DNA of 64,000 nucleotides. Origin: Macrostomum lignano. Its lineage: Eukaryota. The notes beneath the pieces are model-generated. The model ran no database searches. It was not told the origin of the DNA and worked only from the letters and a program-made list of their open reading frames with translations. This document shows positions 11,950 through 57,897 of the stretch, in pieces. The position numbers were made by a program, and so were the translations under genes. The stretch spans positions 62,001 to 126,000 of the forward strand of contig NIVC01000137.1 of assembly GCA_002269645.1 (NCBI GenBank). The letters run 5' to 3'. Position 1 is the stretch's first letter, and every line of letters begins with the position of its first letter.

Positions 11950-13581
11950 CCTTCAAGAAAATCTCAGTTTGTAAACAGTGCACACTGCAAGATACTTGAC
12001 AATATTTTTTAATCAAATTGACTGTAGGTTTTTTATAAGCTTTTGGCGACCTGGGTCTGAATTGGGCTATTACGAGCTAAAGTATTGATTAGTTATCGCG
12101 GGGTCACGCCTTGCTCCCTCGGCGCTGATTGGCTGGACAGCCAGCCCGTTCAGACCTGCCCCACTCCCCAATATTCGCTCAGCCTGCAATGTACGTCTGT
12201 TTTCTATGCACTGTACAGTCAGAACAGCCTCTGTCTATTTTGCCACTAAAAAGTCGCAAATGAACTTAATCACTTAACTGAAGGCTCGTGCACTCACACA
12301 GCCATCAAATAAGGGCAAATTTGTGTGATCCACACAGCATGCATCAAATTTGATTCCTATGTACATTGGTTGCGTTACTTGGTGGCTAAATTGATGGCAG
12401 AGTGAATGAGCCTGTCTTAAGATAGCTTAAGAAAATTGTTGCATATTTGTTAACGTTAAATGAGTGAATAAGATGAGAGTCGATGTTTGATGCTTAAAGG
12501 CTTGCTTAAATTGGCATTAAACGAGACGAGAGTTGCATTTGTGTGTAATATTTGGTGGCCGTGTGAACTACCAGTAGTCACGAATGTCTTAACGAAGGCA
12601 GCGAGCTTTTTTCATAAAATTTTGCGCATTAACAAGTTGTAATTTCTCAACCACTTGCTCAACAAAAAGACGTTTTATAAATAATCAAGATACAGTAACT
12701 AATACCGCATATATACTTATGATGCTACTAAATGTAAGCAAAACTCCTTTTAAACAAAATCTGTGCAAAAAGCATCACCCAGATATAAATAAAAGGTTGT
12801 GAGTAGTATGAAGGTAAATATTTATATCGTGTGCTAGCTATGCGAAATTCAGCTGCAAAAGTAGCGATGGATGTACAATCTTATGTGCGTAAAGGTAAAT
12901 AATATGCTCACCAACAGCTACACCCCAACTGAACTAACGCTTTTCACGACACGAAAAGCTAAGCAAAGCTCATTGTTAGTGATTCAGTAAAATGTAACAT
13001 GAAAAAGAGTTCCGTGACTCGTTGTGGAGTCGGGGTCATAGCCTGGATCTTTTATGTCAAATGCAGCGCGCTATTCTACTAAGCTGGGTCTTTACCACCA
13101 GGGGCTTTAGCACCAGGGGCTTTAGCACCAAGGGGCTTTAGCACCAGGGGCTTTAGCACCAGGGGCTTTAGCACCAGGGGCTTTAGCACCAAGGTGCTTT
13201 AGCACAGGGGCGCCATCACCTAGGGCGACAGCAGCAGGGCTATACTTTATAGTTTAAATACTTTATAAACTAGCCTACACTTTATGGTGCGCCGATCGGA
13301 GCCGAGGGAGATGCCGCTTCCCACCTTGGCGGCCCGAACACCAACCGGTCTTGGGCCAGCTGAGTCAATCACTAATTACATTGCTTAACTTTTGTGCCGC
13401 GCTGTTCCTGATTGCATGGTTATGTATCACCATGAAGGCGTACAAGCATTCTCAGAATGAGACAGTACGAGTAATGAACTATACGAGTTCCAGATAAGAA
13501 ATAAGAATTAAAATATCATTAAGTTCATTGTTAATGTTTTTGTTAAAACCCGGGCAAGAAATTCAGATTCTTCTCAATTGA

Positions 13582-30781: not shown

Positions 30782-31338
30782 CCATAGACAGTCCAATCCA
30801 GCACCCAGGCCACTGAGGCCAGCCATAGACAGTCCAATCCAGCACCCAGGCCAGCCATAGACAGTCCAATCCAGCACCCAGGCCAGCCATAGACAGTCCA
30901 ATCCAGCACCCATGCCAGCCATAGACAGTCCAATCCAGCACCCATGCCAGCCATAGACAGTCCAATGCAGCACCCATGCCAGCCATAGACAGTCCAATGC
31001 AGCACCCAGGCCAGCCATAGACAGTCCAATGCAGCACCCATGCCAGCCATAGACAGTCCAATGCAGCACCCATGCCAGCCATAGACAGTCCAATGCAGCA
31101 CCCATGCCAGCCATAGACAGTCCAATGCAGCACCCATGCCAGCCATAGACAGTCCAATGCAGCACCCATGCCAGCCATAGACAGTCCAATGCAGCACCCA
31201 TGCCAGCCATAGTCCAATGCAGCACCCATGCCAGCCATAGACAGTCCCATGCAGCACCCAGGCCAGCCATAGACAGTCCAATGCAGCACCCATGCCAGCC
31301 ATAGTCCAATGCAGCACCCATGCCAGCCATAGACAGTC
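30782..31338. repeat. 32-bp minisatellite CCATGCCAGCCATAGACAGTCCAATGCAGCAC overlapping the DGKE start codon
   Basis: Tandem units; the last unit contains the ATG at 31320. Confidence 0.95.
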
Positions 31339-34300
31339 TTAGTGCATCTGAATTCAATTTCTCTCTGTTGCTGGCCCCCCACTGGGCGTGGCAAGCGCTA
31401 TACGCTGCCGGCCTTCTATTGCTCACCTACTTATTAATCTACCTGAGAAAGCTGCGACACCGTCGCCTACCGGATCCCAGTGTGCCGGCCCCGGATGACG
31501 GCGCCGCTCCTAGCAACAACGGTCACCGGTGGCGCCGAATCGGTCACTTCGATCGGCCAGCTTATTGTGGAGTCTCTGGCGGAGCCGCTATGCTCGAAGG
31601 CGCCGTCTGTCAGCACTGCGGCCTGTGCGTTTCCGACTCGGAACTGTCCGTTGCAGTCCGCGCTGTGCCCTGCAAGCCTGTCGCTTTGATACCTTCGTCA
31701 TCCTCGCCATCATCGGATGCTGACATAGAAGGCACACCGCATCATTGGGTTGAAGGCAATTTGCCAGCCTATTCAATGTGCTGCGTTTGTCGCGATGCCT
31801 GCGGCGAAGCTGGCCGACTGTGCGACCTGCGGTGCGCCTGGTGCCAGCGCTGCGTGCATCCAGACTGCGCCCAGTTGACTGCCAATGGAGCGTAAGTGAG
31901 GCCCAAGGACAACTGCTTTAAAGTACAGTAAGTAGAAAGAGGAGACCTTGACCTAAATGCAACTTTGGCTAACCCTGGCTAACCCTGGCCAAATTTGGAC
32001 AACGATACGGTGACAAGAATCGCTAAAGAGTCGTTGCAAACAACTCACTTGTGACTCTAGCGACTTTCTGGGGCGATTCTTGCGGCTTTTTTTAACGATT
32101 CAAATGCGGCGAAGAGGCGCTGACTGTTGTGTCACAAGCGAGCTTTTCTGGCGAGCTTTACCAGGACATCTTGTTTTTAGAGTCGTCTAGAGTCACTTTT
32201 TATATTTCACCTGTGTTACCTGCAACCACTCTGGGGCAACTTAAGTGACTCTGGCTCGTTTTTTGGCCTGTATTCAATACTGCACTAATATTATCTACTA
32301 TTAGTAGTCTAAATTGGCCGTTTCAGTAATATGACATTTAAATTCGCATTTCCAGTCCTTCTACAAGAGAAGGCGGCGAAGCCAACAAAATCAGCAATGC
32401 TGACGCTTCGCAGCGGCGCCAGCTTCCAAGGCTGTGCGATTTCGGCCGCTACGCCGACGCGGTGGTGCCGCCGCACTGTGTGCAACTGTCGAAACCGACT
32501 CGCCGTCGGCAGCCTAGTCTGCTGTCGATGGTGCGGGCTCCCCGGCTGCCCGCCGTTTGGCGGCCCCTGATTGTGCTGGCCAATCGGCACAGCGGCGGAG
32601 GCGAAGGCGACCAAGTGCTGCAGCGATTCCGGGCGGTGCTGAATCCTGCTCAGGTGAGAGGCTCCGGCCAACTTGATTGTTGCTACCTGATTTTCAGTGA
32701 TTGATTGGGGGTTTCAGAATTTCCTTAAGGATCGGCCTTCAATACCGATAAAATTGCTTTAAATTGGAAATCCATCAAAATCAGCCTTTTAATTAACAAA
32801 ATTTTAAAAGTAATCGGCCTTCGATTCTTGAAAATAATCGGCCTTCGATTCTTGAAAATAATCAGCCTTCAATTCCATCAAGAATCGGCCTTCAATTCCA
32901 TCAAGAATCGGCCTTCAATTCCATCAAGAATCGGCCTTCAATTCCATCAAGAATCCGCCTTCAATTCCATCAAGAATCCGCCTTCAATTCCATCAAGAAT
33001 CCGCCTTCAATTCCATCAAGAATCCGCCTTCAATTCCATCAAGAATCCGCCTTCAATTCCATCAAGAATCCGCTTTAAATCAGAAATCGGCCTTCTATTC
33101 CATCAAGAATCGGCCTTCAATTCCATCAAGAATCGGCCTTCAATTCCATCAAGAATCGGCCTTCAATTTCCAGGAATAATCGCCCTGAAGGATGTCACTC
33201 TAAAGCACTGTTCTTCATTTCCCTGAACAATGATAAACACAATGTCCACAGTGAATAATCGATCTCTAAATTTACCTTCTCTCGCAGGTGCTGGACCTGT
33301 CCGAAGTGCCACCCAAAGTGGCCCTGGGCTGGTGCCGCCTCGTACCCAAAGGTGTCACAGCTCGGCTGCTTGTGTGCGGCGGCGACGGCACCGTCGGCTG
33401 GGTGCTGTCCGCCATCGAAGAGCTGGGATTGAGTCCGCCGCCTCCGTTAGCAATTTTCCCGCTGGGCACCGGCAACGATCTGTCCCGCGTGTTAGGTTGG
33501 GGACCGGGTTCGAGCGCCGACGATCTAGATAGCGTCGATGCGTTGTTAAGCGACTTGGCTAACGCTAGCGTAGATCGATTAGATCGTTGGCTTGTATCTG
33601 TGAAGCCCAGCCGATCGATGCTGTTGTCTCGATCTAAGCGGCTTACTATGAGTAATTACTTCAGTCTAGGAGTTGACGCTCTGGTTGCCTTGAATTTCGA
33701 CTCTGCCAGGCGATCGCTGCCTGCGCTTACTGGTAGTCGGATGATTAATAAGCTTTGGTGAGACATTGTAATTGACTAATTGACTAATAGGTGACTGTAT
33801 GTGTCTATTGAGTGCCTGCAGATCTAATTGGCTAATGATTGTCTATCTAATTCACTAATGCTTGTGTTTATCTAACTGACTAATGAGTGACTGTATCTAA
33901 CTAATAGTAGTCTATTTAAATTATCCCCAGGTATTTTGGCTACGGCACCCGAGACCTATGGGAGCGCGCCTGCCGCAATCTGCACCGCCGATTGACCGTG
34001 ATTCTCGACGGCCGAACATTGAATTTGCCAGAATTGGAGGGCCTGGTCGTGCTGAACATCGCCTCCTGGGGCTCCGGCTGCAGGCCGTGGGGATCGTCGG
34101 CTTCTCCGACCGTGTCGGACGATTCCTCGTCCGCGAAGATGTCGAACCCAGCCTCCTCGGCTGCTCAGCCGGATGCTCAGCTGCATTTCCGGCCGCAATC
34201 GCACGGCGACGGCCGATTCGAATTGATGGGGCTGCATTCCAGCTTCCACATGGCCCAGCTGCAGGTGGGATTAGCCCCGGCTATACGGCTGGGCCAGGGT

Positions 34301-34450
34301 TCGAATCTGCAGATTGTACTGCGGTCCGGCAGCGTTCCGGTGCAGGTGGACGGCGAGCCCTGGCTTCAGGGTCCGTGCACTTTTACTGTGGCTCATCGAG
34401 GCCAGGCCGCGGTGCTTCGCTGCGCCACGGATAAGAGTCAGGGCCTGTAG
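31320..34450 (+). CDS. DGKE: Diacylglycerol kinase epsilon; exons 31320-31891, 32356-32653, 33288-33757, 33931-34450
   Basis: N-terminal hydrophobic segment, two C1 domains (HRW...C..C...C, HHWVEGNLP...C..C...C..CQRCVHPDC), PLIVLANRHSG, VCGGDGTVGW, PLGTGNDLSRVLGWG, NYFSLGVDA, LEGLVVLNIASWGSG, QVDGEPW. Phases 2, 0, 2. Confidence 0.95.
32810..33170. repeat. 23-bp minisatellite AAGAATC(G/C)GCCTTCAATTCCATC in DGKE intron 2
   Basis: Tandem units. Confidence 0.94.
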
Positions 34451-35503: not shown

Positions 35504-36415
35504 TCTTGCTGGGCCAGCCCCCAGATCTTCAGTTGTTGGGCCAGCCTCCCAGATCCTCAGTTGCTGGGCCAGCCTTTCAGATCCTCAGTTGCTGGGCCAG
35601 CCTCCCAGATCCTCAGTTGCTGGGCCAGCCTCCCAGATCCTCAGTTGCTGGGCCAGCCTCCCAGATCCTCAGTTGCTGGGCCAGCCTCCCAGATCCTCAG
35701 TTGCTAGGCCAGCCTCCCAGATCCTCAGTTGCTGGGCCAGCCTCCCAGATCCTCAGTTGCTAGGCCAGCCTCCCAGATCCTCAGTTGCTGGGCCAGCCTC
35801 CCAGATCCTCAGTTGGTGGGCCAGCCTCCCAGATCCTCAGTTGCTGGGCCAGCCTCCCAGATCCTCAGTTGCTGGGCCAGCCTCCCAGATCCTCAGTTGC
35901 TAGGCCAGCCTCCCAGATCCTCAGTTGCTGGACCAGCCTCCCAGATCCTCAGTTGGTGGGCCAGCCTCCCAGATCCTCAGTTGCTGGGCCAGCCTCCCAG
36001 ATCCTCAGTTGCTGGGCCAGCCTCCCAGATCCTCAGTTGCTAGGCCAGCCTCCCAGATCCTCAGTTGCTAGGCCAGCCTCCCAGATCCTCAGTTGCTAGG
36101 CCAGCCTCCCAGATCCTCAGTTGCTGGACCAGCCTCCCAGATCCTCAGTTGCTGGACCAGCCTCCCAGATCCTCAGTTGCTGGGCCAGCCTCCCAGATCC
36201 TCAGTTGCTGGGCCAGCCTCCCAGATCCTCAGTTGCTAGGCCAGCCTCCCAGATCCTCAGTTGCTAGGCCAGCCTCCCAGATCCTCAGTTGCTGGGCCAG
36301 CCTCCCAGATCCTCAGTTGCTAGGCCAGCCTCTCAGATCCTCAGTTGCTGGACCAGCCTCCCAGATCCTCAGTTGGTGGGCCAGCCTCCCAGATCCCCAG
36401 TTGCTGGACTCCCAG
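35504..36415. repeat. 28-bp minisatellite GGGCCAGCCTCCCAGATCCTCAGTTGCT upstream of TMEM17
   Basis: Tandem units; same family at 37361-37535 and 56508-57503. Confidence 0.97.
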
Positions 36416-36538: not shown

Positions 36539-37252
36539 ATGAACACAATGAACAGCATGCAGCAGCAAGCCAGCCAGGCTGTGCAGCGGCTGCAAGGCAC
36601 CTGGCGGTCAGCAATGGGCCGCATGACCAATCAAATGTTCCCAGTTCGCAAGCAGGATCTGGAGAAGATCCGCTTACAGACTGGCCGCACAGGGCTTGAG
36701 TACGCCACCTTCCTGCCATTGCAGATTGTGTATTATTTCAACGCATTCTTTGCTCCATTCTGGATTGTCGGCTTCCTATTGTCCATAGTTGACAAGTACA
36801 GCAAGCTGAATTACATCTATCAGCCAATATTGATCGCCCTGTTCTGCTTGTATTGCATCCTGGAATTCATTCGGCTTTACATTGGCTATTTCGGCAATCT
36901 GTCGGAGAATATCGCCGATTTAGCCGGTAGTTGGCTTATCACTACTGTTATACAGCTGCCAGCTATCTGCTTCTTTCTATTCAACTATTTTCTGCTGGTG
37001 AATCCCTTCGAGATCGTCATGCACTCTGTGGAATTCATATTCGTACTGCTAGAAGTGATCATGGGCCTGTACACTATCAAAGTGTTTCAAACTGTTCAGG
37101 CATTGAAGTTTCACCACAAGATGGAGTATTTCAATGCTGACGGATTGGACCAGTCTGGCGAGTCCAGGGAAGACGGCTACGTCTATTATAACAATGCCTT
37201 CGAGGGTACCGAGTTGCGAAGGAGGACCGCCGGCCAAACCACCATTGCTTGA
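36539..37252 (+). CDS. TMEM17: Transmembrane protein 17 (ciliary transition zone), single coding exon, 237 aa
   Basis: LQIVYYFNAFFAPFW, ILEFIRLYIGYFGNLSE, LAGSWLITTVIQLP and a four-TM pattern match the TMEM17/TMEM216 family. Confidence 0.9.
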   Translation: MNTMNSMQQQASQAVQRLQGTWRSAMGRMTNQMFPVRKQDLEKIRLQTGRTGLEYATFLPLQIVYYFNAFFAPFWIVGFLLSIVDKYSKLNYIYQPILIALFCLYCILEFIRLYIGYFGNLSENIADLAGSWLITTVIQLPAICFFLFNYFLLVNPFEIVMHSVEFIFVLLEVIMGLYTIKVFQTVQALKFHHKMEYFNADGLDQSGESREDGYVYYNNAFEGTELRRRTAGQTTIA

Positions 37253-37360
37253 TTGACTTCTTTACTGTGCTAATTATAACTGCTTTTAATTGCTTTTAAT
37301 CAGAGTTATTCTAAATTCTGAAATTGTTGAACCACCTCCTATCTGATATCTGATATCTTG

Positions 37361-37535
37361 CAGATCCTCAGCGGCTGGGTCAGCCACCAGATCCTCAGTT
37401 GCTGGGCCAGCCTTCCAGATCCTCAGTTGCTGGGCCAGCCTCCCAGATCCTCAGTTGCTAGGCCAGCCTCCCAGATCCTCAGTTGCTGGGCCAGCCTCCC
37501 AGATCCTCAGTTGGTGGGCCAGCCTCCCAGATCCT
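37361..37535. repeat. 28-bp minisatellite, same family and orientation, downstream of TMEM17
   Basis: Tandem units. Confidence 0.93.
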
Positions 37536-38322
37536 CATTTTCTGGGGCTGCGGTATTATAAGTTTTGAATTTGATCGATTGTCAATGAAATAGTTAACTG
37601 ACAAAATATCCATGAATTACTCGTACATAATAATTTTTATTGTCATGCGCAGCTGATTAGTTAGAAACCAGCGGATATCTGATATCTTTAGATTATAGCA
37701 CCAAATCGATCATTGCGAACCTAAGTTGTGAATATTGACTCTAACTATATTTAAAAAGTATGAAGTTCGAGTATCTTATAGATTAGACCATCCATTCCGT
37801 CCACTGCTATTTTTGTGTTGTTTCAATATTTTACATGACTAAAGCACTTGAAATTTTTGTTTATAAGAGTAAAAGAGAACTTATAGGTAGCATGTGTCCA
37901 CTGGCTGTGACGCATAACATTTTTTATACTATTAGATACTTGTAATGCCTATATATGTATTTAATAAATATCTCTTCTATTCGTTTGTTCAATGCTATTG
38001 TAGTTTTTTACTGTGTTGACACAGTTTATTGTATTAAAGTATTTATTCGTTAATTTTAAATACCAAATAACATAATTTTTTGATTAAACTTGTAGTACAA
38101 GTCTTGTATTTATTTTTTTCATGAAATATTCAGTGCAGTATTCAGTTGTTGATTTAGTATATAGTTGTTATAGCTATGATGACTCAATTAGTTTAATTTC
38201 AACCGGCTGGATCTGTCTGTCTTTTCTTACTCGAGGACCCATCGTGGCTAAAAGACGTCGACAGACTGTTTAAAACTGTGAGTAGTTTTTTATGCTTAGA
38301 TTTATTAGTAAGATATTTATTA

Positions 38323-38426
38323 ATGATGACCTCGAATGTCTAATTTGAGTCTAGAGAGTGACTATATTTGTTTATAGTTGCTCGTAAGTACCTTGACGAA
38401 AAAATTAAACAAGAATTACCGTCTGA
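38323..38426 (+). ncRNA. Box C/D snoRNA, predicted guide for 18S Um (yeast U578/snR77, human U627/SNORD65 site)
   Basis: C box ATGATGA 38323; D box CTGA 38423. GAATTACCG upstream of D is complementary to conserved 18S CGGUAAUUC; the D+5 base pairs with the first U. Only 9 bp. Confidence 0.65.
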
Positions 38427-38493
38427 AGTATTGATATCAGATGGGGTTGGTTAATATTCCTACTTTAAATGTTACAGTTATTGGCCTATATTA

Positions 38494-38567
38494 ATGATGA
38501 TAAAATTATTGTATGCAAAGATAAAATCGTGACTTTTTGCAATCTAAAGCTGATTTAATGAGACTGA
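38494..38567 (+). ncRNA. Box C/D snoRNA family A copy 1 (U57/SNORD57/snR51-type, 18S Am99)
   Basis: ATGATGA...AGCTGATTTAATGAG-A-CTGA. The guide is complementary to 18S CUCAUUAAAUCAG(C/U)U; D+5 targets A99 (human numbering). Confidence 0.9.
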
Positions 38568-38760
38568 ATATTTAGAGCCATGAAACTTTATTATAAATTT
38601 AGTTTGTAACTTCCATTTTTAATATCGATTTTTCTATCAACCTGCTCCTTTTGTTTTAGGACCTCTACAGTGTATTATCGGTTCATGTGTTAAAGAAGAT
38701 AGGTAAGTCAATTGGATTATTACTAAGTTTAGTGGAACAAAGGATTTTATGAATACAGCT

Positions 38761-38831
38761 TTGATGATAATCTCTATATAAATGACCTCAAATATTATGA
38801 GTGTAACCTAAAGCTGATTTAATGAGACTAT
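38761..38831 (+). pseudogene. Family A copy 2 with degenerate D box (CTAT)
   Basis: TTGATGA C box and intact guide, but CTGA is replaced by CTAT. Confidence 0.65.
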
Positions 38832-39023
38832 CAGTAGCAATTATTTGTTCAAACAGAACTCATTTTCTTGAATTAAATTTACTTAAAACAATCAATAGCG
38901 TAATATTTTATTTCATTTTTCAGGATTGGATTTCGGCTGTAATGGAAATGATATCTGGTAATCTTGTTTTTTAATTTTTTATTACTGTTTTTCAGTAGCA
39001 ATTACTGTTTGATATTTAAGCAC

Positions 39024-39118
39024 ATGATGACACTTGAACATTAGAACGTAATTATTATTAAACACCTAACAAGTGACTTATTAGTTTTACGAATTGATAA
39101 TAACACCCAGCTCTCTGA
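39024..39118 (+). ncRNA. Box C/D snoRNA family B copy 1 (28S C equivalent to yeast Cm2948, snR69-type)
   Basis: ATGATGA...TAACACCCAGCTC-T-CTGA. The core is complementary to 28S GAGCUGGGU; D+5 pairs with the C of GAGCUG. Confidence 0.82.
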
Positions 39119-39805
39119 AGCAATGTTTAGAACCCCACCTAGTACTAATACACCTATTTTAAAGAAATTAGCTCATCGAAATTTCATGCACTGCCGTTAT
39201 TTTTGTTACAGGTCGCAGTTTTAAGACCAGTTTGTGTGTAAAAGATCAAGTTACTGCTTAAATTGCACGTCATAGGGTAAGTGTAATTTCTTTCCTAATA
39301 ACTGTTATTAATTATTGAACTTTTTGCATCAGTTTTCCACTAAAGCTTTGTGAGAGTAAAAGATTTATCGATTTTATGGTCGACCGTCCCTATCTAAACC
39401 CCACCTCACTCCGCTAACCCTATCTTACTGTAGCAAGCGAGTGTGGAATCGGGATGGGTAAGAGAGCTTTATCGATTTTCTCGCTGGCGTCTTAACCCCA
39501 CCAATTCCCTATCTTATCTGCCCCCACCATTAGCCCCACCAGCTAACAGCCCCCAAGGCACGGAGTGAGTCAGTGTTGTTATCGATTTTCTGGTTGGTCG
39601 CCCCAAGCCAAGCCCCACCCCATTTTTAGGTTTTTTGTGCCCACTAGCGTTACTTTATCGGCATATAGCTTTTGACTGGTTTTAAAGTGACAACAACCTC
39701 CATTCCCCATAATACGTACGGGGTTAATTTCCCCCTTTGCGTATCTGAAACTCTAATACGTTTTTTTTTGGTAATGTTTAATTTATTGTACTCGTAGATT
39801 TGCTG

Positions 39806-39873
39806 ATGATGAATTTTTTAACAATAAATGATCGCAATGTGATTGCAATCCAAAGCTGATTTAATGAGACTGA
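39806..39873 (+). ncRNA. snoRNA family A copy 3
   Basis: C box 39806, same guide, D box 39870, terminal stem TGCT/AGCA. Confidence 0.9.
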
Positions 39874-40064
39874 AATAGCATTTCTGTGTTGGTAAAATTT
39901 TTTTCGCAAGTATTTATTTGAAATTCACATGCTGTTACGCTACAGCTCTGCAATTCGTTCCAATTTTAGATGTGTTGATGATGAAGTACTTCTATTTAAT
40001 CGTCGATGGTAAGCTTGACCCGTGTTATTTTTGGAAGCTACTGTACTCCGTTCGGTATTAAAGA

Positions 40065-40148
40065 ATGATGACATTCGAACATTCGATAGCAATGGACACT
40101 TTTAGTGGCTCATTGTTTTCAAAGTGATAATAACACCCAGCTCTCTGA
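40065..40148 (+). ncRNA. snoRNA family B copy 2
   Basis: C box 40065, ACCCAGCTCT-CTGA with D box 40145, internal CAATG/CATTG stem. Confidence 0.82.
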
Positions 40149-40343
40149 ATAGTGATTTTATACTTGGTTTTTGAATGTGAATTTTGTTTTATTTGAAATT
40201 TGGAGCATTACAGTCGCCTTTGCATTTGCAGGCCTTGAAATCGAGAAAAAATTATCATGAGAGATTACCATGGTTCATGACATCGACTAGGTAAGAATGC
40301 AAGTGTGAAATAGTAGTACTCATTTTATTTTTAAAACATTTTT

Positions 40344-40407
40344 AGGATGAATTTATATTTCATGAATATTTTTGTGATTAACACAAAAGCTGATTTAATG
40401 AGACTGA
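40344..40407 (+). ncRNA. snoRNA family A copy 4 (variant C box AGGATGA)
   Basis: Guide and D box (40404) intact. Confidence 0.8.
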
Positions 40408-40604
40408 CAATTCTTTATACGAGCTTAGATTAGGAGTTGGAAGTTGTTAATATCGTTGCCACTGAACTATTCTTTTTTTACTATTGCAGACCTCAGTGTT
40501 CATTTCGAGAAGATTCTGCGAAAGTCAATAAAATTGATCTACTGTAAGTAGTTAGTTCGATCATACGTTTCGTTGTATTTTTAACTACGATATTTTTTCC
40601 AAAT

Positions 40605-40672
40605 ATGATGACCTTTGAACATTTGAATGCAGGATTCCATCCGACTATTTGATATTAACCCCAGCTCTCTGA
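40605..40672 (+). ncRNA. snoRNA family B copy 3
   Basis: C box 40605; TAACCCCAGCTCT-CTGA. Confidence 0.82.
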
Positions 40673-40877
40673 ACTTTCGTTGAACTTATATTTTTGTACT
40701 TTTGATTTGGCTACATGCACTTTTCGTAACCTAAAAAATTGATCTTAATAAACAAACGTTTCTATTTTTAGACTTGCTGAAAACACAACTTTGACTGGAA
40801 ATTGGCTAAAGTGTAAGCAATAGCTCTTATTTTTGTTTTATTTTATTATACATTTTTAATTCAGCAAAATAAAAAAT

Positions 40878-40962
40878 ATGATGAAAATCGAACAGTTGAC
40901 TAAAGTTCATCGTACAAGCGTATGGTGTACTTTTATCTTTGATATCAACCCCAGCTCTCTGA
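40878..40962 (+). ncRNA. snoRNA family B copy 4
   Basis: C box 40878; CAACCCCAGCTCT-CTGA. Confidence 0.82.
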
Positions 40963-41139
40963 GAATTACACAGTATTATAAAGCTTTGAAAGCAATTTAA
41001 AATACTTAAATTAAATTTGATATACCAAATATACATGGCTGTTCATTTTTCAGATCGCACAGGAGCCTTATTTATTTCTCGATTGCTCTTGTAACAAGTA
41101 AGTTCATAATTTATTTAAATATCAAAACCAACTATCAAT

Positions 41140-41208
41140 ATGATGATACTCTAATAAATATTTGATCACAACCGTGACCTTACACTAAAGCTGATTTAAT
41201 GAGACTGA
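41140..41208 (+). ncRNA. snoRNA family A copy 5
   Basis: C box 41140, guide, D box 41205. Confidence 0.9.
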
Positions 41209-41404
41209 TAATTTGCTCTATGTGATAATATTACTTAATGATATCTACATTTCTCGTACATTTTCTCATGATAATTTTTTCTCTATTTATTTTAGAACTA
41301 ATTAATTGAAGCTGAACTCGAATATGGGAATTTCAAGATGATATCAGTAAGTATAAAATGATTTTTTAATCATGAAAAAAATTAGAGTTATTAAATGGTT
41401 GAAA

Positions 41405-41476
41405 ATGATGAAAGATTTACATAGTTGAGTGATTATTTTTCTGATGATCATTCGAAAGCTGATTTAATGAGGCTGA
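41405..41476 (+). ncRNA. snoRNA family A copy 6
   Basis: C box 41405; AGCTGATTTAATGAG-G-CTGA. Confidence 0.88.
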
Positions 41477-42149
41477 AAATTGTCAACACATTCATATTTA
41501 TTTTTATCTTTTCGCGTCAAAGTTTGTTTTTAACAAGTGATTTTTAACATCAATTTTAGATGGAAACTAATCTCAACAGTTTAAGTAAGTGACATACTAA
41601 TAACTTGAAAGTAATTTAATACTGTACAACTCCATGTTTTTGGTATTAAGAAGATTCAAAAATCCGCTTGAATGCTTAGCAAAACAGCTTTCTACATTCA
41701 CTACAGTAGTAGAGAAGAATACATAAGCTATTTTAGAAAAATAAAGGCAGCTAAAATGACTTTGATAAGTTTAGAAGCCCACAAGCTTGCATGCGTAAAC
41801 AGCTTGCTAATTGGTTCAGCAATGATGTACATTAGCCAGTCCGCTTAAATGTACATAGCAGCTTTAGGCTGGATTTGCGAGAAATCAATGAAAATTGGGG
41901 CGGGCGGGGGGTAGTGTGAAAAGGCGCCGTTGGAAGGTTTACGCTCTTGGGGAGGGGTAAGAGCCAATAAATAAGCCTTGGCTTTAAAAATACATTAAAA
42001 TGCTTCCGTTTAACTTACTACTGAACTGAAAGTAGCTTGCACGCAAATGTGCTGAGTGGCCCATCCTGTGGTTTGTGCACGAAAATTGACCAGTCCAGGG
42101 GCTGTCGTGCGATTCACTTTAAAACGTTACTTTTGCACAAAAACAACTT

Positions 42150-42251
42150 ATGATGACAATTGAACATTTGAACTGCTTTAGTGCTAGACAAATATTAAGC
42201 ATATTTGTTTATCCAAAAGCAAAAAATTGCAATTAAACCCCAGCTCTCTGA
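42150..42251 (+). ncRNA. snoRNA family B copy 5
   Basis: C box 42150; TAAACCCCAGCTCT-CTGA. Confidence 0.82.
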
Positions 42252-42440
42252 CACTATTTGTTTTTATATTATTATTTCAAGACCTATTGGATTTCTTAGA
42301 ATGCTTAACTTTTCGTCAAAAATTTTGTCATTTCAGATTTTCCTTGTGAAATTTTCGGTCTTCTGTTCCAAGTTATAAAGTAAGCATTACGAAACTATCT
42401 TTATAGATTTAGTTGTTAAGCATTTTCACGTTCCAAACAC

Positions 42441-42542
42441 ATGATGAAACTTGAACATTTGAGACCGGATTGTAGCAAATTCTTTTAAAAAGTTTTTGTA
42501 CTTTCGCGGTGTACTTATTTGAAATTAACCCCAGCTCTCTGA
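42441..42542 (+). ncRNA. snoRNA family B copy 6
   Basis: C box 42441; TAACCCCAGCTCT-CTGA; terminal CAC/GTG stem. Confidence 0.82.
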
Positions 42543-42684
42543 GTGCGTGTTTATCAGTTTTGAATGTTTCATTATATTAGATATCGGTGCAAACTGTTTT
42601 AATATTTCTTATCATCATTTTGCCTTTCAGATTGAACTCCAGGCAGCAAACAGCGGGAATAAAGAAGTTTATAGGATGTGGTAG

Positions 42685-43255
42685 AATGTACTTTTCATCT
42701 CATAAACTGTAGATTGTACTTTTCATCTCATAGAGTTAGAGTGTACTTTTCATCTCATAGAGTTAGAGTGTACTTTTCATCTCATAGAGTTAGAGTGTAC
42801 TTTTCATCTCATAGAGTTAGAGTGTACTTTTCATCTCATAAAGTTAGAGTGTACTTTTCATCTCATAGAGTTAGAGTGTACTTTTCATCTCATAGAGTTA
42901 GAGTGTACTTTTCATCTTATAGAGTTAGAGTGTACTTTTCATCTCATAGAGTTAGAGTGTACTTTTCATCTCAGAGTTAGAGTGTACTTTTCATCTCAGA
43001 GTTAGAGTGTACTTTTCATCTCAGAGTTAGAGTGTACTTTTCATCTCAGAGTTAGAGTGTACTTTTTATCTCAGAGTTAGAGTGTACTTTTCATCTCAGA
43101 GTTAGAGTGTACTTTTCATCTCAGAGTTAGAGTGTACTTTTCATCTCATAGAGTTAGAGTGTACTTTTCATCTCATAGAGTTAGAGTGTACTTTTCATCT
43201 CATAGAGTTAGAGTGTACTTTTCATCTCATAGAGTTAGAGTGTACTTTTCATCTG
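42685..43255. repeat. 27/25-bp minisatellite GTGTACTTTTCATCTC(AT)AGAGTTAGA between the host-gene polyA site and the SET gene
   Basis: Tandem units. Confidence 0.96.
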
Positions 43256-43390
43256 ATAGTCGCATAGTGTGTAGATAATGCTTTTCGACTCAGTTTGTAG
43301 AATGTACTTTTTAGTTTCTAGAATGTGTTAAATTTACTTTTCAGTTTAAAAAGATCCTACTAAAAATTTTTTTTCACACTTAATTTCCAG

Positions 43391-44279
43391 CAATCAACAA
43401 TTGATGCAGCTGTTTCTCGTCTCAGTGGCGGTCGCCTGCGTGTAGCCGAGTTTCCATTGGTTGCCAAAAGCAACAACAATGGCTTCGTTAGCACGACGGA
43501 AGCCAACAGCAACGGATTGTTGCGTGGTCTGCAAGCAACCAGAGACATTGCTTGCGGAGAGCCTCTGATGACCATTCCTGTAGACATGATGCTGCTTCCG
43601 CCTCCTGTGCCGAAGCCTGTGCAATCGGTATTGATGCGGCTTTCCACCGCACTGTTTAGTCATCTTTCAATGCCTGCCACTGAGGGCGGCGGCAGTCTCA
43701 CAGACATTAGAGCTTGTATACTTAATTCCACCTCATCCTTAACGCCTCCGTCAGCCTCCAATGAGGTGCTGCAAGTTGCCAAGAGCGTCGAGTCGCGTAT
43801 GTTATTGAAAAATCGATTAGATGAAGCTAAAGAGAGGCTGGGTTACGCAACCGATTTGCTGATTGATCGGCTGGCTGCGCTGGCTTCTGATTGGCTGGCC
43901 GCTGCGCCTGCAGATGCGCTGCAGTACAATGGACATCAAATGTGGCTGGCTTGCTGCTATTGGACTAATACGAGGTTTGTGTCTGCGGGCTAAGCTATGT
44001 TGCTGTGACTGAGTGCAGACTGATCGCTGTAGCTAGCTGTCTGTCTGTCTGTCTGTCTGTCTGTCTGCCTGTCCGTCTCACTGTCTGTCTGTCTATGTTT
44101 CCGTCTGCTGTGTCTGTCTGCCTGTTCCTGTCTGTCTGTCGGTCTGTCGGCTGTCTGTCTGTCTGTCTGTCTGCCTGCCTGTCCATCTGCCTGTCTGCCC
44201 GCCTGCCTGCCTGTCTGCCCGTTTGCCTGCCTGTCTGTCTGTCTGTCCATCTGTCTGTCTGTGTGTCTGTTTGTGTGTG

Positions 44280-47130: not shown

Positions 47131-47212
47131 GCCAAGTCTATCATGGTAGTAATAGTAGAAATATAATATAATAGAAATAAAAAAGAAATAAATTCTTTCT
47201 TTAATGTGTTGC

Positions 47213-49364
47213 ATGTCGAACAGCAAGTCCAACTCAAACGCAGCCGCCAGCAAGCGCAGCGGAGGAGGCGGCAGCGATATAGTTGACAGTCTGGGCAGTA
47301 CGGCCACAAACGAGCGAATTCTGAAAGAGTGCCACCATCTATATGCTAACGAAGAGAATGGCCTGGCAAAGCTGGCCCAGCTAGTCAATGTGAAACTGTT
47401 GCCACCGAGGAAGAAAATCACAGTCTTATTGATTGGCAATCACTCCGCCGGGAAGAGCGCCTTTATCAATTGGTATATTGAGAAACAGATCCAGAAGGAA
47501 GGCGTTGCCATAGAGACGCAGGGTATCACCATAGTAACACAGGGTAAACGCCGAGAATCGCTTAGTGGCAACGCCACGTTGCACCTGTTTCCTCAGCTGG
47601 CTCCGCTAGCAAAATTTGACGGCGTAGTGTCGAATCTGAGCACAGAGCTGTGCGACAGCATTGCTAAAAGATTCGCTCTCGTGACCTTTATTGACACGCC
47701 CGGTCTAGTCGACGGCTCAATGTCGTACGCGTTCGACGTGAACCGGGTGCTGCTTTGGCTGGCTGTTCAAGCCGATTTAGTGTTCGCCTTTTTTGACCCC
47801 ATCGGTCAGGCGCTGTGCAAGCGCACTATGCAGATCCTGGCAGATATTGGCGATAGGATCGATCGCGACAGAATCGTCTTCTTTTTAAGTAAAGCCGACG
47901 AGAGCGGCGACGAAACTGACAGACAGCGCGTGCTGATGCAGATCACCCAGGAGGTGTGCAAATGGCCGTCTCTAAATCGGACCTGCTTCGACATTCACAC
48001 CATCTACAATCCCAATCGGGCCAAGCCGACTCGTTGCGTCAATCAGATCGACGAAGCCGCCAAAACTATTGACAAGGCTATTCAGATGACGCTGCAGCAT
48101 ACTCTGAATGCACTTGAGCACGATTGCAAGGTTAGAAAAAACTTATGTGTTCAGTCATCTTCCAAGTGATCTTATATGGAGCCATTGTCTTCAAGATGCT
48201 CATAGATTGAGCCATTGTCTTCAAGATGCTCATAGATCTAGCCATTGTCTTCAAGATGCTCATAGATTGAGCCATTGTCTTCAAGATGCTCATAGATCTA
48301 GCCATTGTCTTCAAGATGCTCACAGATTGAGCCATTGTCTTCAAGATGCTCATAGATTGAGACTTTGTCTTCAAGATGCTCATAGATTGAGACATTGTCT
48401 TCAACATGCTCATAGATTCAGACATTGTCTTCAAGATGCTCATAGATTGAGCGATTGTCTTCAAGATGCTCACAGATTGAGCGATTGTCTTCAAGATGCT
48501 CATAGATTGAGCGATTGTATTCAAGATGCTCATAGACTGAGCCATTGTCTTCAAAATGATTATAGATTGAGCCATCGTCCTCAAGATTCTCATACTCAAG
48601 ATTAGTAGATTGAGACATTGTCTTCAAGATGCTCATAGACTGAGGCATTGTCTTCCAGTTGGTCAGAGATTGATCTATTATCTTCCTGTTGCTTTCAAGA
48701 TCCTGTTATCCATGCTTCGGCGCAACCTAGGGATTCACCCGTTTCTATTGGCAACACACACATGTAAGTCGCTATTGGACGGAATAGTAGTCACGTGACT
48801 GCTCTCAACCAATAGCGACTTACATGTGTGTGTGTTGCCAATAGAAACGGCCGAGTGATTCCCAAGGTTGCGCATGTATGCAGTGTTATCGATCGAGACG
48901 CAGCCTGTCAACCCCTCCCCTCCCCCCAGTTGATCTCGCGTCGCTGCCACGAAGACATCGCCGCCGACGCCGCCCGCGGTCGCGCCAACTGCGGCGCCAG
49001 ATTTCGCTTCCTGCTATTCAGCCTGCTGGCCCTCGTGCTGCCCGTACTGCTCGCCATTTGCGTCTCCCAACCTGTTGCTATCCAGTTGCTAGGCTATTCG
49101 ACTCCGTTGCACGACTTTCTTGTGCCGCTCTATCGACGCTTTCCGGCCGAGTACAGTTCGCACCTGTTCGGCGGGGTGGCCGCTGTCGCCCTGTTCTGCT
49201 TTGTCCTCGCCCGCCTGTGCGGCCGCACCGCCAAGCGGCTCACCAGGGCTGAGCGGCGCCGCCTCGGCCAGGTCAGCGATCACGTGACCGGCTTTGTGGA
49301 AGCCCAGCGGAAGGAGCTGTACACCGCCTATTTGAAGCAGAGCGTGAAAGACTCCGACTTTTGA
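47213..49364 (+). CDS. Uncharacterised dynamin/EHD-like P-loop GTPase with two C-terminal TM segments; exons 47213-48130, 48930-49364
   Basis: G1 GNHSAGKS, G2 ET, G3 DTPG, G4-like SKAD. Hydrophobic segments FLLFSLLALVLPVLLAICV and LFGGVAAVALFCFVLA. Phase-0 junction. Confidence 0.85.
48180..48655. repeat. 30-bp minisatellite GAGCCATTGTCTTCAAGATGCTCATAGATT in the GTPase intron
   Basis: Tandem units. Confidence 0.95.
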
Positions 49365-55600: not shown

Positions 55601-57897
55601 TCGCATGGCGGCATCTCTTTGTTGGCGCCTCCACCGGCAGCGGTCTGTGGGGCTCCGTTCTAGCAGCGCTTGGCGCCCTGTGCGTCGCTTTAAGCCTCGT
55701 TGGGCTCAGGCGTCGGGCGCCACTGCTGCGGTCGCTGCCCTCCTTAGCGATGTTCTTTGGTAAGTCATGATCTCATTTACTGGCGTGTTGATGACGTCAT
55801 TCTCGGTTTGGTTGATGAAGTCACTCTGGTGTGTTTATGGCGTCATTCTCAGGTGTGTTGATGACGTCATTATCAGGTGAGTTGATGACGTCATTATCAG
55901 GTGAGTTGATGACGTCATTCTCAGGTGTGTTGATAAGGGCATTCTCGGTGGGATCATAGGGTTATTCTGAGGTGGGATCATAGGGTTATTCTGAGGTGGG
56001 ATCATAGGGTTATTCTGAGGTGGGATCATGAGTCATTCGGCATGCAAGCAGCTGCTCAGCCTGCTACTCCTGATTCCAACTGGATCCCGCAACTGTGCTC
56101 AGGCTTCATCGGTGCAGTCAGCTGCCTGACCATGTGGCCCGGCTTCTTCATCCTGCACTACTCCCGGCTGGAACAGTTCCAATTGCCCAACGCCACCAAC
56201 TGGGGCAGGTTCGTCTTCCACGGCTTGACTGGCGTGGCGCTGTCCGAGTTCCTGCTGGTGCTGTGAGTTCTGTAAACTTATTTAAAGATTCTCTTTTAAT
56301 CTCAATTACGAGTGTATTTTAAATTTATAAGTGGCTACGACTTTTCACACTGCAGCGGTTGCTACCTGACCAACAGCCTGGCAGCTTGCATGTCCTGCAC
56401 CCTTGCCGTGCCGCTGGCCTGTGTGGCTGGCATTGCTTTCTTTCACAGGGTGAGATGCCTGTTTTTTATTGATTTTGGCCTCTGGCTGCCTTCCATAGCT
56501 GTTCACCGCCAGCCTCCCAGATCCCCAGTTGCTGGGCCAGCTTCCCAGATCCCCAGTTGCTGGGCCAGCCTCCCATATCCCCAGTTGCTGGGCCAGCCTC
56601 CCATATCCCCAGTTGCTGGGCCAGCCTCCCAGATCTTCAGTTGCTGAGCCAGTCTCCCAGATCCTCAGTTGGTGGGCCAGCCTCCCATATCCCCAGTTGC
56701 TGGGCCAGCCTCCCAGATCCTCAGTTGCTGGGCCAGCCTCCCATATCCCCAGTTGCTGGGCCAGCCTCCCAGATCCTCATTTTCTGGGCCAGCCTCCCAG
56801 ATCCCCAGTTGCTGGGCCAGCCTCCCAGATCCTCAGTTGCTGGGCCAGCCTCCCATATCCCCAGTTGCTGGGCCAGCCTCCCAGATCTTCAGTTGCTGAG
56901 CCAGCCTCCCAGATCCTCAGTTGCTGGGCCACCAGCCTCCCAGATCCTCAGTTGGTGGGCCAGTCTCCCAGATCCTCAGTTGCTGGGCCAGCCTCCCAGA
57001 TCCTCAGTTGCTGGGCCAGTCTCCCAGATCCTCAGTTGGTGGGCCAGCCTCCCAGATCCTCAGTTGCTGGGCCAGCCTCCCAGATCCTCAGTTGCTGGGC
57101 CAGCCTTCCAGATCCTCAGTTGGTGGGCCAGCCTCCCAGATCCCCAGTTGCTGGGCCAGTCTCCCAGATCCTCATTTGCTGGGCCAGCCTCCCAGATCCT
57201 CAGTTTCTGGGCCAGTCTCCCAGATCCTCAGTTGGTGGGCCAGCCTCCCAGATCCCCAGTTGGTGGGCCAGCCTCCCAGATCCTCAGTTGCTAAGCCAGC
57301 CTCCCAGATCCCCAGTTGCTGGGCCAGCCTCCCAGATCCTCAGTTGCTGGGCCAGTCTCCCAGATCCCCAGTTGGTGGGCCAGCCTCCCAGATCCTCAGT
57401 TGGTGGGCCAGCCTCCCAGATCCCCAGTTGCTGGGCCAGCCTCCCAGATCCCCAGTTGCTGGGCCAGCCTCCCAGATCCCCAGTTGCTGGGCCAGCCTCC
57501 CAGATGCTCCTGCACGGTCGCCACCCCGCAGCCCGGCTCAGAGATTTGGCGCCTCTCAGTCGGCGGCCCGCTGACAGTCCTGGCATTCGTTGCCGCCCTG
57601 TGGCTGCCGCGAGTCGGCGACCCCCTGCTGAGCGCCGTCATCGCCTTCCGCGACCTGACGGCCGGCCCGGCCGGCGTGCTGACCGCGTCATCAACTGCTA
57701 TCAACGACTCCGGCGACTCCGACGGCAGCTTCGACGCCGACAACAACGCGATCGGCTACAACGACGACAGTGATGGCGAGCGACTGTCCCGACGTCAGCA
57801 GCGACGTTCCCGACGAATTGTCCGGCACTCGGCGTCGGCAGTCGCGGCTTCCTCCGTTGCCGGGCCATCGACCTCTGCTGGAGGCTCGCTGTTGTAG
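52634..57897 (+). CDS. SLC35F5: Solute carrier SLC35F5-like; exons ~52634-53254, 53960-54454, 55312-55759, 56103-56262, 56356-56449, 57532-57897 (start uncertain)
   Basis: RPFLVVYTS, SDPHFVPVQF, VRFSRISEVRQL...ARMSY, GFIGAVSCLTMWPGFFILHYS, GVALSEFL, GCYLTNSL. Junction phases are consistent. Confidence 0.88.
53300..53865. repeat. 23-bp minisatellite CAACCTGAGGTCAATCCAGATAA in SLC35F5 intron 1
   Basis: Tandem units with a higher-order duplication. Confidence 0.94.
55790..56030. repeat. Short 24-bp minisatellites in SLC35F5 intron 3
   Basis: GTTGATGACGTCATT... and GGTGGGATCATAGGGTTATTCTGA units. Confidence 0.85.
56508..57503. repeat. 28-bp minisatellite (TMEM17-flank family) in the last SLC35F5 intron
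   Basis: Tandem units; accounts for the 414-aa ORF. Confidence 0.96.

What the first reader, a model, noticed from the sequence alone, without database searches (positions are those of the whole stretch)
38236..42670. Hidden non-coding host gene with 13 intronic C/D snoRNAs: two guide families each amplified six-fold and interleaved
The ORF track shows almost nothing here, yet the region is a regular chain of 25-65 nt non-coding exons whose introns carry C/D snoRNAs. Six copies share AGCTGATTTAATGAG before box D (18S Am99, U57/snR51-type). Six share CCCAGCTC (28S yeast-C2948 equivalent, snR69-type). One has a distinct guide. The order is X,A,A*,B,A,B,A,B,B,A,A,B,B. Outside boxes and guides the copies have diverged strongly, so the duplications are old and the guides are under selection. 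Six-fold redundancy for two rRNA sites in one GAS5/UHG-like host is unusual; C2948 is methylated in yeast but, as far as I recall, is not a standard vertebrate site. Whether this locus is already annotated is unknown to me.
Basis: partly seen in the sequence, partly recalled or inferred. Interest (0 to 1): 0.82.

Follow-up and report, generated by a model that had tools for sequence, protein, structure and literature searches.

The report
Flatworm non-coding snoRNA host gene
This stretch of the flatworm Macrostomum lignano genome looks like an unannotated non-coding gene whose 12 introns carry 13 small RNAs that guide methylation of three conserved ribosomal RNA positions, a design already known from fly Uhg and mammalian GAS5/UHG genes.

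Summary

The window is Macrostomum lignano (GCA_002269645.1, NIVC01000137.1).
- Family A (6 copies) pairs 16-19 bp with 18S at the human A99 / yeast A100 position (U57/snR51 type).
- Family B (6 copies) pairs 8-9 bp plus an extension with 28S GAGCUGGG, placing yeast C2948 at D+5 (snR69 type). No human equivalent of this site is listed.
- X carries the snR77/snoR77Y/HBII-135 guide, aimed at the 18S 530-loop U.

In this copy A2* has lost box D and A4 has an AGGAUGA box C.

Copies share nothing outside boxes and guides. The spliced RNA has stops in all frames. Box D lies 82-99 nt from the 3' splice site in 12 of 13 units.

Two syntenic paralogous loci keep the same gene. There, snoRNAs diverge about half as fast as the rest of the introns.

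Expression and splicing could not be tested.

Fly Uhg1 (16 snoRNAs, 5 positions) and CD3a-d show that multi-copy hosts are known. This is a new member of a known kind, of moderate-low interest.

The parts
38224..38277 (+). Exon 1. The 5' end is not determined; the donor is GTGAGT at 38278.
   Evidence: The pyrimidine run CTTTTCTTAC at 38221-38230 is not conserved in the paralogs.
38323..38426 (+). snoRNA X (box C ATGATGA to box D CTGA, 104 nt). The guide GAAUUACCGU targets the 18S 530-loop U (yeast U578 type). It shares intron 1 with A1.
38494..38567 (+). snoRNA A1 (18S A99/A100 guide), in intron 1
38660..38702 (+). Exon 2 (43 nt)
38761..38831 (+). snoRNA A2*. Box C is TTGATGA and the guide is intact. 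Box D is replaced by CTAT through an 8-nt deletion, so this copy is probably dead in this locus. It is intact in L002/L003.
38924..38957 (+). Exon 3 (34 nt; donor GTAATC)
39024..39118 (+). snoRNA B1 (28S yeast-C2948-equivalent guide; variant ACACCCAGCUCU gives 9 contiguous bp)
39212..39276 (+). Exon 4 (65 nt)
39806..39873 (+). snoRNA A3, the best SNORD57 match (29.4 bits, below the gathering score of 47). It lies in the 693-nt intron 4.
39970..40008 (+). Exon 5 (39 nt)
40065..40148 (+). snoRNA B2
40232..40290 (+). Exon 6 (59 nt). The paralogs lack 13 nt here, which breaks the longest ORF.
40344..40407 (+). snoRNA A4 (box C variant AGGATGA)
40490..40543 (+). Exon 7 (54 nt)
40605..40672 (+). snoRNA B3
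40772..40812 (+). Exon 8 (41 nt)
40878..40962 (+). snoRNA B4. Its 3' half shows weak similarity to Rfam sn3060, which has the same antisense element.
41054..41097 (+). Exon 9 (44 nt)
41140..41208 (+). snoRNA A5
41296..41346 (+). Exon 10 (51 nt)
41405..41476 (+). snoRNA A6
41560..41584 (+). Exon 11 (25 nt)
42150..42251 (+). snoRNA B5, in the 752-nt intron 11
42337..42379 (+). Exon 12 (43 nt)
42441..42542 (+). snoRNA B6
42631..42685 (+). Exon 13, the terminal exon. Its 3' end is approximate.
42658..42663 (+). AATAAA poly(A) signal, conserved in both paralogs

Best explanation
This is an unannotated non-protein-coding snoRNA host gene of Macrostomum lignano, of the UHG/GAS5/Drosophila-Uhg type. 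A Pol II transcript of about 4.5 kb is spliced into a roughly 600-nt RNA with no coding potential. The excised introns are trimmed to box C/D snoRNAs, which assemble with fibrillarin, Nop56, Nop58 and Snu13. The snoRNAs direct 2'-O-methylation of three conserved rRNA positions: the 18S 530-loop U (X), 18S A99/A100 (family A) and the 28S C equivalent to yeast C2948 (family B). The array arose by old tandem duplications of intron-plus-exon units. Only the boxes, guides, splice sites and the snoRNA-to-3'-splice-site distance have since been maintained. Shown from sequence: boxes, guide complementarity, exon/intron signals, lack of ORF, and conservation pattern. Inferred: transcription, splicing, snoRNP assembly and the methylations themselves.
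For: Organism and locus: the adjacent TMEM17 protein maps exactly to M. lignano GCA_002269645.1 contig NIVC01000137.1, and no gene is called between it and the next protein gene. Boxes: 11 of 13 units have ATGATGA and 12 of 13 have CTGA, at 64-104 nt spacing. Guides: family A pairs 16-19 bp with 18S so that A99/A100 falls at D+5, in four of four complete eukaryotic rDNA units, and all six copies hit SNORD57 below threshold. Family B pairs GAGCUGGG(U) with C at D+5; the target was present in 13 of 13 rDNA loci that cover it, and Rfam sn3060 has the same antisense AAACCCAGCUCUCUGA. X has GAAUUACCGU|CUGA, identical to the snoR77Y consensus guide, giving 10 bp with GCGGUAAUUC. Host architecture: there are 12 donor/acceptor pairs. 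Strand bias is GTRAGT 9 versus 1 and TTTYAGR 12 versus 2. The distance from box D to the 3' splice site is 82-99 nt in 12 of 13 units, although introns range from 198 to 752 nt. AATAAA lies at the end. Non-coding: stops occur in all frames, and the longest ORF (65 aa) is broken by a 13-nt indel in the paralogs. Selection: copies are unalignable outside boxes and guides. Between paralogous loci, substitutions are 2.7% in snoRNAs, 5.7% in the rest of the introns (Fisher p = 5e-5) and 4.6% in exons (not significant).
Against: No expression, splice-junction or small-RNA data could be reached; a probe with the 65-aa spliced ORF found nothing in the protein database. The species' own rRNA was not available, so targets were tested on other eukaryotes' rDNA, although these sites are invariant there. 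Family B has only 8-9 contiguous pairs. Terminal stems are weak, at 3-7 bp and often offset. No Rfam family reaches its gathering score. The transcription start is undefined, and the TOP-like tract is not conserved in the paralogs. Divergence between paralogs is regionally uneven, which weakens the rate comparison.
Confidence: 0.85

Rival explanations
1. The snoRNAs are real but are not made by splicing. They would come from a polycistronic or independently promoted tandem cluster, as in plants, trypanosomes or many nematode snoRNAs, and the 'exons' would be just spacers.
For: No transcript evidence was obtained. X and A1 lie in one predicted intron, which departs from the vertebrate one-snoRNA-per-intron rule.
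Against: Twelve consecutive spacers each carry a pyrimidine-tract-AG acceptor followed 25-65 nt later by a GTRAGN-type donor. These signals are strongly strand-biased and above shuffle expectation (GTAAG 14 versus mean 4.3). The distance from box D to the acceptor is held at 82-99 nt while the upstream part of the intron varies from 42 to 565 nt. No upstream promoter-like motif is shared between units.
Confidence: 0.07
2. The array is a decaying relic. Most copies would be pseudogenes and the locus would no longer contribute to rRNA methylation.
For: Lesions exist and differ between loci. The window's A2* lacks box D. A4 has a variant box C. L003 A1 has a 6-nt insertion in its guide. L002/L003 B4 has a C-to-G change in its guide. 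L003 exon 9 has a weakened donor.
Against: Boxes and guides are invariant across copies whose other sequence is randomised. Eleven of 13 units in the window have canonical C and D boxes and a 12th (A4) has a variant box C, and all keep their guides. snoRNA segments evolve at about half the intron rate between paralogs. Scattered single-copy lesions are what redundancy predicts.
Confidence: 0.05
3. It is a protein-coding gene made of micro-exons, or the spliced RNA has its own sequence-dependent function in addition to hosting snoRNAs.
For: A 65-aa ATG ORF spans exons 5-9. Some exons (E2, E4, E13) are identical between the paralogs.
Against: Stops occur in all three frames. The paralogs have indels of 13, 3, 2, 1 and 4 nt inside exons. 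The ORF has no homologue. The exon substitution rate does not differ from the intron rate (p = 0.36).
Confidence: 0.03

Closest known systems
Drosophila melanogaster Uhg genes (Uhg1-8; dUHG1/2 of Tycowski & Steitz 2001, which I did not read)
   Same: They are non-coding multi-intron hosts in which successive introns carry C/D snoRNAs, including several copies of the same guide. Uhg1 has 16 snoRNAs for 5 methylated positions (PMC4430873). Forty-two percent of the expressed fly C/D snoRNAs sit in seven Uhg lncRNAs, and CD3a-d (four copies) guide 28S Cm3480, the equivalent of yeast C2948 (PMC11014333).
   Different: Here two guide families reach six copies each and only three sites are served. 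Fly has no Nm listed at the 18S A99/A100 equivalent. This is a different phylum (Platyhelminthes), and no sequence similarity exists beyond boxes and guides.
Mammalian GAS5 / UHG (SNHG1) type host genes
   Same: They have short, poorly conserved, ORF-less exons, one C/D snoRNA per intron placed a fixed distance upstream of the 3' splice site, and a poly(A) signal (general knowledge; GAS5/UHG comparison also in PMC2780460).
   Different: Mammalian hosts carry mostly different snoRNAs rather than repeated copies. The 5'TOP start typical of those genes could not be established here. Intron 1 holds two snoRNAs.
SNORD57 (U57) / yeast snR51
   Same: The antisense element CUGAUUUAAUGAG next to box D is identical, and the predicted target 18S A99/A100 is the same.
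   Different: Scores are 21.6-29.4 bits against a gathering score of 47, and nothing but box C, the guide and box D aligns. I recall, and did not check, that human SNORD57 sits in a protein-coding host (NOP56).
Yeast snR69 / Arabidopsis snoR69Y / Dictyostelium CD15 / nematode sn3060
   Same: The guide puts the 28S C of GAGCUGGG at D+5. Yeast snR69 also has an extra conserved element adjacent to D' that pairs near the target (PMC3116282), and family B likewise has a conserved element next to D'.
   Different: The family B guide is short (8-9 contiguous bp) with a mismatch or bulge before the extension. Rfam sn3060 scores 16.8-19.7 bits against 45.
Yeast snR77 / plant snoR77Y / human HBII-135 (SNORD65)
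   Same: X carries GAAUUACCGUCUGA, the same guide as the snoR77Y consensus. It targets the universally methylated 530-loop U: yeast Um578 and fly Um586.
   Different: In Neurospora the homologue's guide precedes D'; here it precedes D. The Rfam score is 18.2 against 52.
Imprinted SNORD116/SNORD115 and SNORD113/114 arrays (mammals)
   Same: They are tandemly repeated units of non-coding exon plus intron with one C/D snoRNA (own knowledge).
   Different: Those snoRNAs are orphans without rRNA targets, their copies are recent and alike, and there are dozens of them. Here the guides are canonical rRNA guides and the copies are ancient.

Membership tests
Box C/D snoRNA | Box C (RUGAUGA) near the 5' end and box D (CUGA) near the 3' end, 60-110 nt apart | tested here: met
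   Eleven of 13 units have ATGATGA; A2* has TTGATGA and A4 has AGGATGA. Twelve of 13 have CTGA; A2* has CTAT. Spacing is 64-104 nt.
Box C/D snoRNA | An antisense element ending next to box D/D' that pairs with rRNA so that a known Nm site lies at D+5 | tested here: met
   Family A: 16-19 bp, 18S A99/A100. X: 10 bp, 18S 530-loop U. Family B: 8-9 bp plus an extension, 28S C2948 equivalent. Tested on foreign rDNA, not on the species' own.
Box C/D snoRNA | A short terminal stem bringing boxes C and D together | tested here: inconclusive
   The best flanking helices are 3-7 bp, often offset from the boxes.
Box C/D snoRNA | A stable 60-110-nt RNA bound by fibrillarin/Nop56/Nop58 | not testable with these tools
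   No expression data could be reached.
Non-coding snoRNA host gene (UHG/GAS5/Uhg type) | Multiple introns each carrying a snoRNA, bounded by functional splice sites | tested here: met
   Twelve introns have consensus donors and acceptors, strand-biased. Intron 1 carries two snoRNAs.
Non-coding snoRNA host gene (UHG/GAS5/Uhg type) | The spliced RNA lacks a conserved ORF, and the exons are less constrained than the snoRNAs | tested here: met
   Stops in all frames. The 65-aa ORF is broken by an indel in the paralogs. Substitution is 4.6% in exons and 2.7% in snoRNAs.
Non-coding snoRNA host gene (UHG/GAS5/Uhg type) | The snoRNA is placed at a fixed distance upstream of the 3' splice site | tested here: met
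   82-99 nt in 12 of 13 units, irrespective of intron length.
Non-coding snoRNA host gene (UHG/GAS5/Uhg type) | A 5'TOP transcription start or growth-regulated promoter (Myc E-box in fly and vertebrates) | tested here: inconclusive
   CTTTTCTTAC precedes and overlaps the start of exon 1 in the window but is absent from the paralogs. There is no CACGTG in 37300-38700. The TSS is unknown.
Non-coding snoRNA host gene (UHG/GAS5/Uhg type) | A spliced, polyadenylated transcript is observed | not testable with these tools
   AATAAA is present.
Rfam SNORD57 (RF00274) | A score at or above the gathering threshold (47 bits) | tested here: not met
   21.6-29.4 bits for the six A copies. The guide and target are the same, so family A works like U57, but membership by the model is not shown.
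Rfam sn3060 (RF01153) / snR69-type guides | A score at or above the gathering threshold (45 bits) | tested here: not met
   16.8-19.7 bits for B1 and B4. The antisense element is shared.
Rfam snoR77Y (RF01178) | A score at or above the gathering threshold (52 bits) | tested here: not met
   18.2 bits for X. The guide GAAUUACCGUCUGA is shared.

The most novel reading that the evidence does not exclude
Family B is a true double guide. Its second element (UYGAACAK followed by a D'-like UNGA, with a C'-like UUGAUA downstream) is conserved in all six otherwise randomised copies. It would serve an undescribed function: either a flatworm-specific methylation site, or non-methylating 'extra' pairing with the invariant 28S A-loop (UGUUCA, 27 nt upstream of the C target) during assembly of the peptidyl-transferase centre. 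The roughly 17 family A and 16 family B gene copies across three loci would then reflect selection for high dosage at these sites.
Probability: 0.2. Interest if true: 0.5.

Novelty: new member of a known kind. Interest (0 to 1): 0.3.

Why it matters
It gives a concrete, coordinate-level annotation of a snoRNA host gene in Macrostomum lignano, a flatworm model for stem cells and regeneration. I found no snoRNA study for this species, and the deposited annotation calls no gene here.

It shows that the Uhg-style design, a non-coding host with repeated copies of the same guide, occurs outside arthropods and vertebrates. It also suggests that the snR69-type guide for the 28S C2948-equivalent site, for which published tables list no human counterpart, is kept in a flatworm.

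It makes three testable methylation predictions and flags a conserved second element in family B whose partner is unknown. Nothing here overturns current understanding.

Tried and rejected
1. Rfam at gathering thresholds over the whole window found nothing. Only sub-threshold hits were useful.
2. I sought direct evidence of splicing through the 65-aa ORF that spans four predicted junctions.
3. I tested synteny in other species through TMEM17. Only the M. lignano cluster was found, so comparison was limited to two paralogous loci of the same genome.
4. I searched for the target of the family B 5' element. No helix of 8.5 or more weighted pairs recurred at one site across four rDNA units. Motif scans gave several 6-8-bp candidates (28S A-loop, 18S GAGUGUUCAAAG, 5.8S CUGUUYGAG, others) and none was decisive.
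5. The family A 5' regions (possible D' guides) are not conserved between copies and gave no consistent target.
6. An extra box C-like ATGATGA at 38176 is ATGGTGA in the paralogs, so I rejected it.
7. A scan of every CTGA in 37300-43400 on both strands for rRNA complementarity found no further candidates.
8. The long inserts in introns 4 and 11 are unique in the window and match no Rfam family.
9. I did not try to retrieve M. lignano rDNA through spurious rDNA ORFs, judging the chance of success too low for the cost.

Full report
**Where the window comes from.** The single-exon TMEM17-family ORF at 36539-37252 is an exact product on contig NIVC01000137.1 of assembly GCA_002269645.1. Its 90% cluster contains two further proteins that NCBI and UniProt name as Macrostomum lignano (taxonomy). 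Locus L001 is identical to the window, with window position = L001 position + 26538. The deposited gene calls show nothing between TMEM17 and the next protein gene, which starts near window 43391. The finding therefore lies in an unannotated 6-kb gap.

**Checking the observation.**
- AGCTGATTTAATGAG occurs six times, all on the + strand and all inside 38548-41471. The expectation is 0.23, and no shuffle reached six.
- CCCAGCTCTCTGA occurs six times exactly, all on the + strand, 39106-42542.
- Every copy ends in CTGA and lies 64-104 nt downstream of an ATGATGA-type box C.
- Two copies are imperfect. A2* has CTAT where box D should be, because of an 8-nt deletion that the paralogous loci lack. 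A4 has AGGATGA as box C.

**Families.**
- In alignments of the six A and six B copies, the only invariant columns are box C, box D, the guide next to box D and a short internal box.
- Family B has in addition an invariant block T.GAACA.T.GA directly after box C.
- Internal regions, 80 nt upstream and 90 nt downstream are no more alike between copies than shuffled sequence. The exceptions are A4-A6, B1-B2 and A3-A5 internally (z = 3-5), and two B pairs (B3-B4, B4-B6) with z of about 2.5-3 in the upstream flank.
- The duplications are therefore old, and boxes and guides have been held by selection.

**Targets.** I pulled eukaryotic rDNA units from metagenome contigs and used four complete ones.
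- Family A pairs 16-19 bp with 18S CUCAUUAAAUCAG... so that the A of CUCA lies at D+5, in all four units. By my own count on the human 18S sequence, recalled from memory, this is A99 (yeast A100). All six copies are the best, though sub-threshold, SNORD57 hits, at 21.6-29.4 bits against a gathering score of 47.
- Family B pairs CCCAGCUC with GAGCUGGG. This gives 8 contiguous pairs, or 9 in B1/B2, followed by one mismatch and 1-4 more pairs. The C falls at D+5.
- The family B target string was present in 13 of 13 rDNA loci covering that region, always 27 nt downstream of the U of the A-loop UGUUC. That spacing identifies it as the yeast C2948 equivalent.
- The literature supports this assignment. 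Cm2948 is guided by snR69 in yeast (PMC8053091). The equivalent is methylated in Dictyostelium with no human counterpart listed (PMC8817022). In Drosophila it is Cm3480, with conservation 'DmYADd' (no human, no Xenopus), and is guided by four copies CD3a-d (PMC11014333). In Neurospora the homologues listed are snR69 and snoR69Y, with none for human (PMC2780460).
- The Rfam nematode family sn3060 has the same antisense AAACCCAGCUCUCUGA.
- In paralog L002, B6 has lost one C, which makes a perfect 10-bp match to GAGCUGGGUU. This supports the target assignment.
- X carries GAAUUACCGU|CUGA. It pairs 10 bp (one G-U) with GCGGUAAUUC of the 18S 530 loop, with U at D+5, in all four units. This is the guide of the snoR77Y consensus, that is, the snR77/snoR77Y/HBII-135 group. 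That U is methylated in all species compared in the fly study (Um586).

**Host gene.**
- Thirteen segments of 25-65 nt are each preceded by a pyrimidine tract plus AG and followed by GTGAGT, GTAAGT, GTAAGC, GTAAGA or GTAATC.
- These signals are strand-specific: GTRAGT 9 versus 1, and TTTYAGR 12 versus 2. GTAAG occurs 14 times against a shuffle mean of 4.3.
- Introns are 198-752 nt long, yet box D lies 82-99 nt from the acceptor in 12 of 13 units. In the two long introns the extra DNA lies upstream of the snoRNA.
- This fixed distance matches what is known for splicing-dependent processing of intronic C/D snoRNAs. That is my own knowledge (Hirose & Steitz 2001); PMC2780460 makes the same point.
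- X is the exception. It shares intron 1 with A1, and I found no convincing micro-exon between them.
- The joined exons give about 600 nt with stops in all frames. The longest ORF is 65 aa. A 13-nt indel in exon 6 of the paralogs breaks it, and it has no homologue.
- AATAAA at 42658-42663 is conserved.
- The 5' end is not defined. The pyrimidine run CTTTTCTTAC in the window is missing from the paralogs, and there is no E-box nearby.

**Paralogous loci.**
- The two other TMEM17 cluster members lie on NIVC01000497.1 (L002) and NIVC01000844.1 (L003). The upstream neighbours (DAG kinase, then TMEM17) are the same at both loci, and L003 also shows the same downstream genes.
- Both carry the whole host gene, about 89-92% identical to the window by BLAST.
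- Between the window and L002, substitutions are 2.7% in the snoRNA segments, 4.6% in exons and 5.7% in the rest of the introns. The snoRNA-versus-intron comparison gives Fisher p = 5e-5; exon versus intron gives p = 0.36.
- Divergence is regionally uneven. Positions 40299-40700 are almost identical between the window and L002 and nearly so in L003, so the rate comparison is indicative only.
- Each locus has its own lesions. The window's A2* lacks box D. L003 A1 has a 6-nt insertion in its guide. L002/L003 B4 has a C-to-G change in its guide. L003 exon 9 has a weakened donor.
- Scattered lesions of this kind are what redundancy allows.

**Unresolved: the second element of family B.**
- Its position is that of a D' guide. 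Eleven nt lie between box C and a UNGA, and a UUGAUA-like C' sits just before the 3' guide.
- No site pairs 8 or more bp with all six copies in the rDNAs available.
- One candidate is the invariant A-loop UGUUCA, 27 nt upstream of the methylated C. It gives 5-6 bp.
- This would resemble yeast snR69, which is reported to have extra pairing next to D' with sequence flanking its target (PMC3116282; PMC8053091).
- I could not compare with the yeast sequence, so this remains a lead.

**Comparison and verdict.**
- By every feature testable from sequence, this is a non-coding multi-snoRNA host gene.
- The nearest known design is the Drosophila Uhg family. Uhg1 holds 16 snoRNAs for five positions (PMC4430873). 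Seven Uhg lncRNAs hold 42% of the expressed fly C/D snoRNAs, with lettered copies of the same guide (PMC11014333).
- Six copies per guide is somewhat more than the three or four seen per guide in the fly table, but it is not a new principle.
- I found no paper on Macrostomum snoRNAs.
- I rate it a new member of a known kind, with interest about 0.3. The main open items are expression and splicing evidence and the partner of the family B 5' element.

Noticed in passing
window 39365-39690 (intron 4): Three direct repeats of about 105-110 nt start with TTATCGATTTT and are rich in CCCCACC. They form a GC-rich block inside an AT-rich intron. The block is kept in both paralogs at low divergence, is unique in the window, and has no Rfam match.
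   Followed up: partly
L002 about 13757-14207 and L003 about 13331-13781 (intron 4; insertion point between window 39636 and 39637): An extra insertion of about 450 nt is bounded by inverted repeats (GGGATTGCAA...CCCGGGATC). It looks like a MITE and is absent from the window copy.
   Followed up: no
window 40299-40700 compared with L002/L003: This block, covering A4, exon 7 and B3, is almost identical between the window and L002 (0-3 differences per 100 nt against 5-10 elsewhere) and nearly so in L003. This suggests gene conversion between paralogous host genes.
   Followed up: no
window 42682-43259: A 27-nt minisatellite (about 22 copies, 97% matches) begins right after the host gene's poly(A) signal. 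Related repeats follow the gene in both paralogs.
   Followed up: no
window 35506-36407, 37361-37546, 56508-57509: The same 28-nt minisatellite unit (TTGCTGGGCCAGCCTCCCAGATCCTCAG) occurs at three places and produces long spurious ORFs. The window as a whole is packed with minisatellites (82 TRF rows).
   Followed up: no
window 38176-38182: A box C-like ATGATGA lies upstream of exon 1. It is ATGGTGA in both paralogs and has no box D partner, so it is not a 14th snoRNA.
   Followed up: yes
L002 and L003, aligned to window 38548-38562, 40950-40962, 41092-41103 and 42527-42542: The paralogs carry different lesions or variants: a 6-nt insertion in the A1 guide (L003), a C-to-G change in the B4 guide (both), the exon 9 donor reduced to GTTCAT (L003), and a 1-nt deletion in B6 that improves the match to 28S (L002).
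   Followed up: partly
window 31320-34450, 36539-37252, 47204-48169: The flanking protein genes are GC-rich, in contrast to the host gene (33% GC against 45% for the window). They are a diacylglycerol kinase, TMEM17 and a dynamin-like GTPase, by the Pfam hits listed with the locus.
   Followed up: partly
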